A stretch of DNA of 63,321 nucleotides, counting the filler, from Octopus bimaculoides (taxonomy: Eukaryota), in assembly GCF_001194135.2 (NCBI RefSeq). It is 6 parts of 6 records of this genome, joined end to end, with 100 filler letters (N's around TTAATTAATTAA, not from the genome) between each part and the next. Parts side by side here need not be neighbours in the genome. Positions count along the whole stretch, not along the records: positions 41,864 to 50,696 come from NC_068984.1; 5 more parts are not named here. The stretch is one strand, 5' to 3'. Shown here one piece after another: positions 41,864-42,550 of the stretch (its first letter is position 1; every line of letters starts with the position of its first letter). The notes below the pieces were generated by a model, which was not told where the DNA came from, did no database searches, and was given only the letters and a program-made list of their open reading frames with translations. The translations under genes and the position numbers were made by a program.

Positions 41864-42150
41864 ATCGTTGCCAGTGCCCCTGAACTGGCTCTTGTGCGGG
41901 TGACACATGAGGTTTTTCGAGCGAGATGAGCGTGGCCATTGCCAGTACCGCCTGACTGGCCTTCGTGCGGGTGACACGTAAAAGCACCCACTACACTCTC
42001 TGAGTGGTTGGCGTTAGGAAGGGCATCCAGCTGCAGAAACTCTGCCAAATCAGATTGGAACCTGGTGTAGCCATCTGGTTTCACCAGTCCTCAGTCAAAT
42101 CGTCCAACCCATGCTAGCATGGAAAGCGGACGTTAAACGACGACGACGAT
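41864..42150 (+). mobile_element. RTE-type 3' UTR/tail fragment
   Basis: ..GTGGTTGGCGTTAGGAAGGGCATCCAGCTG..CATGCTAGCATGGAAAGCGGACGTTAAAC(GAC/GAT)n. Confidence 0.75.
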
Positions 42151-42194
42151 ATATATATATTTAAACAGTCAATATTTTAAAAAACAAAATTTAC

Positions 42195-42263
42195 CTTCAA
42201 CTTCTCTTGAAGTGCTTGTTCATCTACCACAGCCTTCTTCAGAACTGGAATTTGTGCTTTTAA
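42195..42263 (-). CDS. PPP1R21: PPP1R21 second coding exon, LKAQIPVLKKAVVDEQALQEKLK (KLRAQ motif region)
   Basis: Acceptor ...ctctaccttccAG, 69 nt open frame, donor GTAAAT, phase 0/0. It matches the 23-aa segment LRAQNQVLKKGVVDEQANSAALK and joins exon 1 in frame. Intron 1 spans 42264-48511. Confidence 0.93.
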
Positions 42264-42387
42264 CTGGAAGGTAGAGATTCAATAAATTTAGTATGTAATA
42301 CATGCTATCACAAAACACATAGTTTATACACATGCTTAAATTACTCGAAACATCATAAAACAAATAATTAATCAATGTATGTGATAA

Positions 42388-42388
<1 letters not shown>

Positions 42389-42418
<30 letters not shown>

Positions 42419-42550
42419 GTTTAACGTCCGCTTTCCATGCTAGCATGGGTTGGACGATTTGACTGAGGACTGGTGAAACCGGATGGCAACACCAGGCTCC
42501 AGTCTGATTTGGCAGAGTTTCTACAGCTGGATGCCCTTCCTAACGCCAAC
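42389..42550 (-). mobile_element. RTE-type 3' tail fragment, inverted relative to 41864-42150
   Basis: Reverse complement of the same tail, with (CAT)n on the plus strand. Confidence 0.75.

What the first reader, a model, noticed from the sequence alone, without database searches (positions are those of the whole stretch)
42007..42550. Inverted retrotransposon tails clamp the in-frame PPP1R21 exon 2 into a 276-nt loop
Seen: 42007-42140 and 42417-42550 are 134-nt reverse complements with 5 mismatches (about 96%), on one gap-free contig. The 276-nt loop between them contains the whole 69-nt exon 2, both splice sites and the polypyrimidine tract. The exon is phase 0/0, so skipping keeps the frame and removes the KLRAQ-motif segment of the N-terminal coiled coil. 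A third, more diverged plus-strand tail (about 43060-43200) in intron 1 could compete for the 42417-42550 copy. Established: inverted repeats flanking exons form dsRNA that promotes skipping or back-splicing and attracts ADAR; coleoid cephalopods edit RNA extensively; PPP1R21 is the Fy-2 subunit of the Rab5-effector, mRNA-binding FERRY complex. Inference: a young TE pair may have created a structure- or editing-controlled splicing switch on this gene.
Basis: partly seen in the sequence, partly recalled or inferred. Interest (0 to 1): 0.75.

Follow-up and report, generated by a model that had tools for sequence, protein, structure and literature searches.

The report
Inverted young SINE copies flank exon
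Two recent, oppositely oriented copies of a very common octopus retroposon bracket the 69-nt second coding exon of the Octopus bimaculoides PPP1R21 gene and could pair in the pre-mRNA, but this arrangement is ordinary for this genome and nothing shows that it changes splicing.

Summary
Window 42007-42140 and 42417-42550 are 134-nt reverse complements with 5 mismatches. Pairing extends through the trinucleotide tails to 144 nt. The loop holds a 69-nt phase-0/0 exon (42195-42263, minus strand) with both splice sites.

Exon 1 plus exon 2 encode the first 40 residues of O. bimaculoides PPP1R21 (XP_052823648.1), in the KLRAQ domain.

The arms belong to an abundant SINE-like retroposon with tandem subrepeats, a ~190-nt 3' region and a (GAT)n tail.

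- **Upstream arm:** an O. bimaculoides-lineage insertion. O. sinensis and O. vulgaris show the empty site with one copy of the ATGTT target duplication.
- **Downstream arm:** from the same young subfamily, but at a site the other two species fill with an older copy. Its contig ends 143 nt beyond the arm at a 1,089-N gap.

The predicted stem is very stable (z = -28). However, an older third copy upstream forms a 138-bp duplex with the upstream arm before the downstream arm is transcribed.

All five gene models with an N-terminus, across three species, include exon 2. A second exon of this gene in O. vulgaris is also flanked by an inverted pair.

Verdict: real anatomy of a known kind, most likely a neutral intronic dsRNA and ADAR substrate. 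The "splicing switch" is untested.

The parts
41864..42150 (+). Copy 1 of the retroposon (element sense = + strand, antisense to the gene). It is cut at its 5' side by the contig end. Its 3' 144 nt (42007-42150, including the (GAC)3GAT tail) is the downstream arm, 44 nt after the exon 2 donor.
   Evidence: It has two private substitutions (42034, 42060), so it is not a collapsed consensus. The contig ends at 41864, followed by 1,089 N in L003.
42151..42406 (-). Loop between the extended arms (256 nt; 276 nt between the 134-nt cores). It holds the branch point, polypyrimidine tract, exon 2 and its donor.
42195..42263 (-). PPP1R21 coding exon 2, 69 nt, phase 0/0, encoding LKAQIPVLKKAVVDEQALQEKLK.
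   Evidence: for the splice sites. Pfam KLRAQ scores 35.7 bits against a cut-off of 27.3. PDB 7nd2_A PPP1R21 matches at E = 6.5e-8. The first 40 residues are 100% identical to XP_052823648.1.
42386..42552 (-). Copy 2 (element sense = - strand, sense in the pre-mRNA). It is 5'-truncated, with about 157 bp inserted and a (GAT)10 tail, bounded by the target-site duplication AACAT at 42386-42390 and 42548-42552 (ATGTT on the gene strand). The upstream arm is 42407-42550, 143 nt before the exon 2 acceptor.
   Evidence: O. sinensis and O. vulgaris show the empty site AAAT[ATGTT]ATCAC. It sits in the young O. bimaculoides clade.
42949..43210 (+). Copy 3, an older copy of the same family in intron 1 (antisense to the gene). 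It is orthologous in all three Octopus species and is the competitor partner for copy 2.
   Evidence: (I3, I11). It forms 138 bp with copy 2 in the nascent-transcript MFE.
48512..48562 (-). Coding part of PPP1R21 exon 1, MSDLQAKYQRLASEYSK, with donor AAG|GTAAAT. Intron 1 is 42264-48511.

Best explanation
The piece is the 5' end of the Octopus bimaculoides PPP1R21 gene (minus strand).

An abundant Octopus retroposon family has inserted repeatedly into this gene. The family has a variable number of ~66-71-nt tandem subrepeats, a ~190-nt 3' region and a (GAT)n tail, and no detectable tRNA head.

Two copies of a young, O. bimaculoides-specific subfamily landed in opposite orientation 143 nt upstream and 44 nt downstream of exon 2. 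The upstream one did so certainly after the split from O. sinensis/O. vulgaris.

Shown:
- The anatomy, the insertion history and the in-silico stability of the duplex.
- That exon 2 is present in every available gene model.

Inferred:
- In the pre-mRNA the sense copy pairs with one of its antisense partners. It pairs first with the older upstream copy 3, and later possibly with copy 1 or with another young copy in intron 2.
- The resulting long, nearly perfect intronic dsRNA is hyper-edited by ADAR, like very many other such loci in octopus, and is removed with the introns.
- Exon 2 stays predominantly included.

On this reading the inverted pair is a neutral or slightly deleterious by-product of recent retroposition. 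It is not an evolved switch. At most it causes low-level, unregulated skipping.
For: - **Gene identity and exon structure:**
- **Repeat family abundance:** 17, 46 and 34 BLAST segments in the 59-, 88- and 65-kb PPP1R21 loci of O. bimaculoides, O. vulgaris and O. sinensis, in both orientations.
- **Copy 2 is a lineage-specific insertion:** precise empty site with a single ATGTT in two other species, while the flanks are 95-97% identical.
- **Young subfamily:** copies 1 and 2 and L003 18840-19083 and 32414-32601 form a tight clade at 96-98% with no member from the other species. Copy 3 groups with its orthologues.
- **Duplex energies:** copy2:copy1 is -287 kcal/mol and copy3:copy2 is -252 kcal/mol. 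The nascent transcript up to exon 2 already has 138 copy3:copy2 pairs. The exon-looping state (-588) is favoured over the upstream-duplex state (about -548) only at equilibrium.
- **Gene models:** all 5 Octopus PPP1R21 models with an N-terminus contain exon 2, including three O. bimaculoides annotation versions.
- **A second case in the same gene:** another exon in O. vulgaris is flanked by an inverted pair of this family spanning 758 nt, and it is in the annotated protein.
- **Literature:** SINEs dominate octopus repeats (PMC9068888). Octopus has an exceptional fraction of loci forming long near-perfect dsRNA and about 1.05 million hyper-editing sites in one CNS sample (PMC5625713). Octopus alternative splicing is unremarkable, circRNAs are low, and editing lies mostly in intronic and 3'UTR hairpins (PMC9699675).
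Against: - No RNA-seq could be examined, so inclusion of exon 2 rests on gene models, which report the major isoform only.
- The pair is unusually tight (256-nt loop, 141 of 144 positions pairable) and close to the splice sites. Inverted Alus at comparable distances shift a human exon from constitutive to alternative (PMC2533698).
- Two of the three possible antisense partners of copy 2 would loop the exon out.
- At equilibrium the exon-looping fold wins by about 40 kcal/mol.
Confidence: 0.65

Rival explanations
1. The copy2:copy1 stem forms in vivo, loops out exon 2 and causes appreciable in-frame skipping. [quoted passage not shown] ADAR editing, or competition by copy 3, would tune the level between tissues, making it a regulated switch.
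For: - The stem is predicted with z = -28 and remains the MFE pairing when copy 3 is included.
- The exon is phase 0/0.
- There is precedent in human minigenes (PMC2533698).
[quoted passage not shown] An isoform would therefore differ functionally.
- The two A.C mismatches are favoured ADAR geometry (that preference is from my own knowledge).
Against: - No exon-2-less model exists among the retrieved Octopus models.
- The arrangement is a few percent of sequence divergence old and is absent from sister species, so there has been no time for, and there is no sign of, selection for it.
- Copy 3 captures the upstream arm co-transcriptionally.
- Removing 23 residues shifts the heptad register (23 mod 7 = 2; my inference) in the most conserved segment of the domain. 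That looks like damage, not a designed isoform.
- The repeat density makes chance pairs expected.
Confidence: 0.15
2. The inverted pair promotes back-splicing of exon 2 into a circular RNA.
For: Flanking inverted repeats are the standard promoter of exon circularisation (general knowledge). The arms lie within 150 nt of both splice sites.
Against: - A single 69-nt exon is far below the usual size of single-exon circles (my own knowledge).
- circRNAs are reported as low overall in octopus, attributed to ADAR (PMC9699675).
- Pairing within intron 1 (copy3:copy2) competes.
Confidence: 0.03
3. The downstream arm, as written in the assembly, is partly an artefact. The contig ends inside this repeat next to a 1,089-N gap. 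Its sequence could come from reads of other young copies laid over the older copy that occupies this site in the other species. If so, the true pair would be only about 80% complementary.
For: - The contig edge is 143 nt beyond the arm.
- O. bimaculoides copy 1 is only 80.4% identical to the occupant of the same site in O. sinensis, while the flanks are 95-97% and the truly orthologous copy 3 is 89.9%.
- The tree does not place it with that occupant.
Against: - Copy 1 has two private substitutions and its own (GAC)3 tail, joined to the unique (AT)n flank.
- A second, young insertion primed on the old copy's microsatellite tail explains the data equally well. In that case the old copy would be hidden in the gap, and the tandem arrangement would explain why the assembly broke there.
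Confidence: 0.07

Closest known systems
Inverted intronic Alu pairs that base-pair, are A-to-I edited and shift a neighbouring exon from constitutive to alternative (RABL5 exon 3; Lev-Maor et al. 2008, PMC2533698)
   Same: Two copies of a lineage-specific SINE-type retroposon sit in opposite orientation near an exon. A long near-perfect duplex is predicted. Distance to the exon is in the range where effects were seen in that study. The insertion is recent relative to a conserved constitutive exon.
   Different: In RABL5 both Alus lie in the upstream intron, and base-pairing and the splicing effect were shown experimentally. Here the pair straddles the exon and neither editing nor skipping has been shown. 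The element is an unrelated mollusc family with a (GAT)n tail and tandem subrepeats. A third copy competes.
Exon looped out by an engineered hairpin (the classic secondary-structure-induced exon skipping experiments; cited from my own knowledge)
   Same: The exon and both its splice sites lie in the loop of a long stem.
   Different: Those were artificial constructs. In vivo the effect depended on the stem forming before the exon is defined, and here an upstream competitor pairs first.
Hyper-edited intronic inverted-repeat dsRNA loci of octopus (Porath et al. 2017, PMC5625713; Albertin et al. 2022, PMC9068888)
   Same: Neighbouring inverted copies of a repeat in one pre-mRNA forming a long, nearly perfect duplex. 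This is the class to which the locus most plainly belongs.
   Different: Editing at this particular locus has not been examined. Its special feature is only that a coding exon sits in the loop.
Competition between complementary repeats within one intron and across flanking introns (model from the human circRNA literature; cited from my own knowledge)
   Same: One sense copy has alternative antisense partners either in the same intron or across the exon, and the outcome depends on which pair forms.
   Different: That model concerns back-splicing of longer exons. Here the exon is 69 nt and no circular product is known.

Membership tests
PPP1R21 / KLRAQ-domain protein (FERRY subunit Fy-2) gene | The N-terminal peptide matches the KLRAQ domain above the curated threshold and matches the solved human protein. 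| tested here: met
   PF10205 scores 35.7 bits against a cut-off of 27.3. PDB 7nd2_A matches at E = 6.5e-8.
PPP1R21 / KLRAQ-domain protein (FERRY subunit Fy-2) gene | The joined exons reproduce an annotated full-length orthologue. | tested here: met
   The 40 residues are 100% identical to residues 1-40 of XP_052823648.1 (O. bimaculoides, 800 aa). The piece maps exactly to that gene's locus L003 7867-16699. The gene product carries PF10205, PF10212 and PF21636.
Non-LTR retroposon (SINE-like) insertion | Many dispersed copies in both orientations with a shared 3' end. | tested here: met
   17, 46 and 34 BLAST segments in three 59-88-kb loci. Consensus of 35 copies.
Non-LTR retroposon (SINE-like) insertion | A simple-repeat 3' tail and variable 5' truncation. 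| tested here: met
   (GAT)n or (GAC)n tails on all copies. Copy 2 starts at consensus GTTGGCG, while others extend 80-140+ nt further 5'.
Non-LTR retroposon (SINE-like) insertion | Target-site duplication, with an empty site in a related genome. | tested here: met
   For copy 2, ATGTT lies on both sides in O. bimaculoides and once at the unoccupied site in O. sinensis and O. vulgaris. The duplication is 3-5 bp, depending on how the tail end is read.
Non-LTR retroposon (SINE-like) insertion | A pol III-type head (tRNA, 5S or 7SL derived), which defines a SINE in the strict sense. | tested here: inconclusive
   ARAGORN finds nothing and Rfam gives only low-complexity sub-threshold hits in the piece. 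The 5' end of the family was not reached because of the variable tandem subrepeats.
Non-LTR retroposon (SINE-like) insertion | A partner LINE sharing the 3' end. | not tested
   No cephalopod repeat library or whole genome was available.
Inverted-repeat-driven alternative exon (IR-Alu type) | Complementary repeats in opposite orientation close to the exon, able to form a stable duplex. | tested here: met
   141 of 144 positions pairable, -287 kcal/mol, z = -28, at 143 and 44 nt from the splice sites.
Inverted-repeat-driven alternative exon (IR-Alu type) | Evidence that the duplex forms in vivo, namely clustered A-to-I editing in the arms. | not testable with these tools
   No RNA-seq reads were accessible.
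Inverted-repeat-driven alternative exon (IR-Alu type) | The exon is alternatively spliced. | tested here: inconclusive
   All 5 gene models with an N-terminus include exon 2 and none skips it. Gene models do not exclude minor isoforms.
Inverted-repeat-driven alternative exon (IR-Alu type) | The splicing effect disappears when one arm is absent. | not testable with these tools
   Natural arm-less alleles exist in O. sinensis and O. vulgaris, but inclusion levels could not be measured.
circRNA-producing exon | Back-splice junction reads, and an exon of circularisable length. | not testable with these tools
   No reads were available. The 69-nt length argues against it, on general knowledge.

The most novel reading that the evidence does not exclude
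A retroposon insertion younger than the O. bimaculoides / O. sinensis split has converted a deeply conserved constitutive exon of the FERRY scaffold into an alternatively spliced one in O. bimaculoides only. The level would be set by which of three or four antisense partners captures the sense copy, and by how far ADAR melts the duplex. Octopus species with and without the upstream arm would then be a ready-made natural experiment on repeat-driven splicing change in a hyper-editing animal.
Probability: 0.1. Interest if true: 0.5.

Novelty: new member of a known kind. Interest (0 to 1): 0.22.

Why it matters
If the pair did cause skipping, it would be a dated, lineage-specific example outside primates of a retroposon pair changing the splicing of a conserved exon. 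The gene encodes the part of FERRY that binds mRNA.

Sister species that lack one arm would serve as built-in controls, and ADAR-rich tissue would give a natural modulator.

As it stands, the locus is one instance of the very common octopus class of intronic inverted-repeat dsRNA. Its practical value is as a clean test locus. It also warns that contig ends and gaps in the O. bimaculoides assembly fall inside these repeats and distort gene models.

Tried and rejected
Searches that led nowhere:
- A word-indexed protein search with the 40-aa exon1+2 peptide found nothing. With 89 aa it found only short fragments from other organisms, and no Octopus isoforms.
- Exact look-up of two window ORFs, as a route to other assemblies, found nothing. 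The route that worked was the exhaustive HMMER search, then cluster members, then the loci.
- Rfam at E <= 1 gave only microsatellite-driven sub-threshold miRNA/snoRNA hits, and ARAGORN found nothing. The repeat therefore has no recognisable RNA-gene head in the piece.
- Pfam on the RT-like peptide next to copy 3 gave no hit. It is an old fossil in unique syntenic DNA, not part of the repeat.
- A literature search for PPP1R21 in cephalopods found nothing, and one for PPP1R21 exon 2 skipping found nothing relevant.

Readings considered and rejected:
- **The arms as terminal inverted repeats of a DNA transposon carrying the exon.** Only the upstream arm is missing in the sister species, while the exon and loop are present there.
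- **A local inverted duplication or fold-back assembly artefact.** The arms differ in 5' extent, tail sequence and 5 positions, and sequence outside the arms is not complementary.
- **Simple orthology of the downstream arm with the copy at the same site in O. sinensis.** Identity is 80% against 95-97% for the flanks, and the tree placement differs.

Full report
**1. Observation**

Window 42007-42140 and 42417-42550 are reverse complements over 134 nt, with mismatches at 42034, 42055, 42060, 42069 and 42076.

The repeat finder extends the pair through the trinucleotide tails to 42007-42150 / 42407-42550: 144 nt at 94%, with 256 nt between the arms (I1). Complementarity ends abruptly outside these limits.

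On the minus-strand transcript, five of the eight non-Watson-Crick positions are G.U. Only three are true mismatches, two A.C and one U.U.

Folded as RNA, the 581-nt segment forms the full stem. The MFE is -334 kcal/mol against -142 +/- 7 for dinucleotide shuffles, z = -28. The same pairing is kept in the MFE of the 1,397-nt segment that includes the third copy.

**2. The exon and the gene**

- Exon 2 is 42195-42263 on the minus strand, 69 nt. Its acceptor is CTCTACCTTCCAG|, a UACUAAA branch candidate lies 27 nt upstream, and its donor is AAG|GTAAAT.
- Exon 1 coding sequence is 48562-48512 (MSDLQAKYQRLASEYSK|GTAAAT).
- The joined 40 residues hit Pfam KLRAQ above threshold and human PPP1R21 in the FERRY structure 7ND2.
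- An exhaustive HMMER search returned an 800-aa protein identical over residues 1-40. It is XP_052823648.1, PPP1R21 of Octopus bimaculoides.
- The piece maps exactly, reverse-complemented, to that gene's locus in GCA_001194135.2 (L003 7867-16699).
- Exon 3 starts CAG|GTGAACATT (VNI...), so exon 2 is phase 0/0 and skipping it would keep the frame.
- The exon encodes LKAQIPVLKKAVVDEQALQEKLK. The K that precedes LKAQ comes from exon 1.

**3. What the arms are**

There are three copies in the piece:
- Copy 1, + strand, 41864-42150.
- Copy 2, - strand, 42386-42552.
- Copy 3, + strand, about 42949-43210.

Using the three Octopus PPP1R21 loci, the family proves abundant. It gives 17, 46 and 34 BLAST segments in 59, 88 and 65 kb, in both orientations.

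A consensus of 35 copies shows three parts:
- a variable number of ~66-71-nt tandem subrepeats (GTGCCGGTGGCACGTAAAAAGCACC...);
- a well conserved ~190-nt 3' region;
- a (GAT)n tail.

Copies are truncated at different 5' points. No tRNA-like or other RNA-gene head was detected, and the 5' end of the family was not reached. I therefore call it a SINE-like non-LTR retroposon rather than a proven SINE.

**4. History, from three species**

*Copy 2, the upstream arm.* It is absent from O. sinensis and O. vulgaris. Their sequence reads AAAT-ATGTT-ATCAC across the site. O. bimaculoides has ATGTT on both sides of a 157-bp insert. The unique flanks are 95-97% identical between the species. This is a clean lineage-specific retroposition with a 3-5-bp target duplication.

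*Copy 3.* It lies inside a syntenic block, is 89.9% identical to its O. sinensis orthologue, and groups with its orthologues in a neighbour-joining tree. It is old.

*Copy 1, the downstream arm.* This one is odd.
- The same site, with the same tail junction after an (AT)n run 44-50 nt past the exon 2 donor, is occupied in all three species.
- Yet the O. bimaculoides copy is only 80.4% identical to the O. sinensis occupant.
- It clusters instead with copy 2 and two other O. bimaculoides copies at 96-98% identity (L003 18840-19083, itself absent from O. sinensis, and L003 32414-32601).
- Copy 1 carries two private substitutions and its own (GAC)3 tail, so it is a distinct copy and not a consensus.
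- The contig stops inside copy 1, and a 1,089-N gap follows.

The simplest account is a second, young insertion primed on the old copy's microsatellite tail, with the old copy hidden in the gap. Gene conversion or a contig-end error are alternatives. All three are settled by closing the gap.

*The five arm mismatches.* Two are private to copy 1, one is private to copy 2, and two separate two sub-lineages of the young subfamily. Very few changes have therefore accumulated since insertion.

**5. Would the stem form on the exon?**

Transcription runs from exon 1 to copy 3 (antisense), copy 2 (sense), exon 2 and then copy 1 (antisense).

- The copy3:copy2 duplex is almost as strong as copy2:copy1: -252 against -287 kcal/mol.
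- In the MFE of the nascent transcript ending just before copy 1, 138 base pairs join copy 3 to copy 2.
- The exon-looping state is better only at equilibrium: -588 against about -548 kcal/mol.

A further young antisense copy sits in intron 2, 2.5 kb downstream. It is 97.9% identical to copy 2 over the arm and is another possible partner that would loop the exon out.

**6. Is there any sign of an effect?**

I could not reach RNA-seq reads. Indirect evidence points to inclusion.
- The five retrievable Octopus PPP1R21 models with an N-terminus all contain exon 2. These are three O. bimaculoides annotation versions plus O. vulgaris and O. sinensis. No model skips it.
- O. sinensis and O. vulgaris lack the inverted pair and have the same exon, differing at 2 of 69 nt.
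- In O. vulgaris another exon of this gene (L001 65407-65544) is flanked by an inverted pair of the same family spanning 758 nt, and it is in the annotated protein.
- Among 44 exon instances in the three loci, two have such tight inverted flanks. A rate of a few percent per exon would mean many such exons genome-wide; that extrapolation is my own.

The literature agrees with an ordinary reading.
- SINEs dominate the octopus repeat landscape (PMC9068888).
- Octopus has an exceptionally high fraction of loci forming long near-perfect dsRNA, and about a million hyper-editing sites in one CNS sample, mostly from neighbouring inverted repeats (PMC5625713).
- In O. vulgaris, editing is mostly in introns and 3'UTR hairpins, alternative splicing is unremarkable and circRNAs are scarce (PMC9699675).

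**7. Consequence if skipping did occur**

Removing 23 residues from its most conserved stretch would also shift the heptad register by two (my inference). That looks like a hypomorphic product rather than a designed isoform. A recent insertion that caused much skipping would probably be selected against.

**8. Comparison with known systems**

The closest experimentally studied case is the inverted intronic Alu pair that base-pairs, is edited and makes RABL5 exon 3 alternative. Its strength depends on the distance to the exon (PMC2533698).

The octopus locus shares the anatomy. The defining functional features could not be tested here: editing in the arms, alternative use of the exon, and loss of the effect without one arm. 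I therefore file it as a new instance of a known kind of arrangement (exon-flanking inverted retroposons, an intronic dsRNA locus), not as a demonstrated splicing regulator.

**9. Verdict**

- Observation: confirmed.
- Interpretation: partly supported. The anatomy and background are right, but the functional inference is unsupported and somewhat weakened.
- Best explanation: a neutral by-product of recent retroposition that yields an ADAR-substrate dsRNA, with exon 2 still predominantly included (confidence 0.65).
- Interest: 0.22.
- Most novel reading not excluded: a species-specific, repeat-created alternative exon in the FERRY scaffold (probability about 0.1).

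Noticed in passing
window 45932-46120: A ~190-nt near-perfect palindrome in intron 1, flanked by TTAA on both sides, with a predicted RNA hairpin of -143 kcal/mol. It has no match at the orthologous place in O. vulgaris or O. sinensis. A 74% copy lies at L003 37822-38126. It looks like a foldback or MITE-like repeat and is another intronic dsRNA source.
   Followed up: partly
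window ~43925-44140, 46600-46970, 48990-49410 (all + strand): Three copies of a second, different SINE-like family (GGGTTCAGTCCCACT... with an internal (TG)n/(TA)n microsatellite ... CCAGCATGGCCGCAGTCAAATGACTGAAA). All are antisense to the gene; the first is 5'-truncated.
   Followed up: partly
window 42870-42945 (+): A short reading frame, PWELLNANDLALIAESLPELEMKL, resembles the YxDD region of a LINE reverse transcriptase. It is conserved at the orthologous place in O. sinensis and O. vulgaris as PWELLNADDLALIAES. Pfam gives no hit, and it is not part of the arm repeat.
   Followed up: partly
L003 ~20020-20100 and gap L003 20419-21447: The RefSeq model XP_052823648.1 reads through the exon 3 donor (AAA|GTAAGC) into the intron, giving residues VSYSSTILLLPYILIYSNYYHHLH. 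O. vulgaris and O. sinensis have a real exon there (TKVGGGAADLPTPNSEV...IEENARLHKQ). In O. bimaculoides that exon probably lies in an assembly gap, so this is a gene-model artefact.
   Followed up: partly
L001 65407-65544 (O. vulgaris): Another PPP1R21 exon is flanked by an inverted pair of the same repeat family, 335 nt upstream on '-' and 286 nt downstream on '+'. The exon is still in the annotated protein.
   Followed up: no
window 41864 (L003 16700-17788) and window 48866-48875: The contig ends inside copy 1 and is followed by 1,089 N in the source assembly. A separate 10-N gap sits inside an (ATCT)n run about 300 nt upstream of the PPP1R21 start codon.
   Followed up: partly
L002 19794-21341 and L001 equivalent: Intron 1 is about 11.5 kb in O. 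sinensis and O. vulgaris against 6.2 kb in O. bimaculoides. Part of the difference is an extra copy of the arm family followed by a run of its 66-nt subrepeats, so the subrepeats expand as tandem arrays.
   Followed up: no
window 42055 and 42076 (downstream arm): Two of the three true mismatches in the RNA duplex are A.C, with the A on the downstream arm. From my own knowledge, this is the geometry ADAR edits most readily, so these would be the first positions to check for editing.
   Followed up: no
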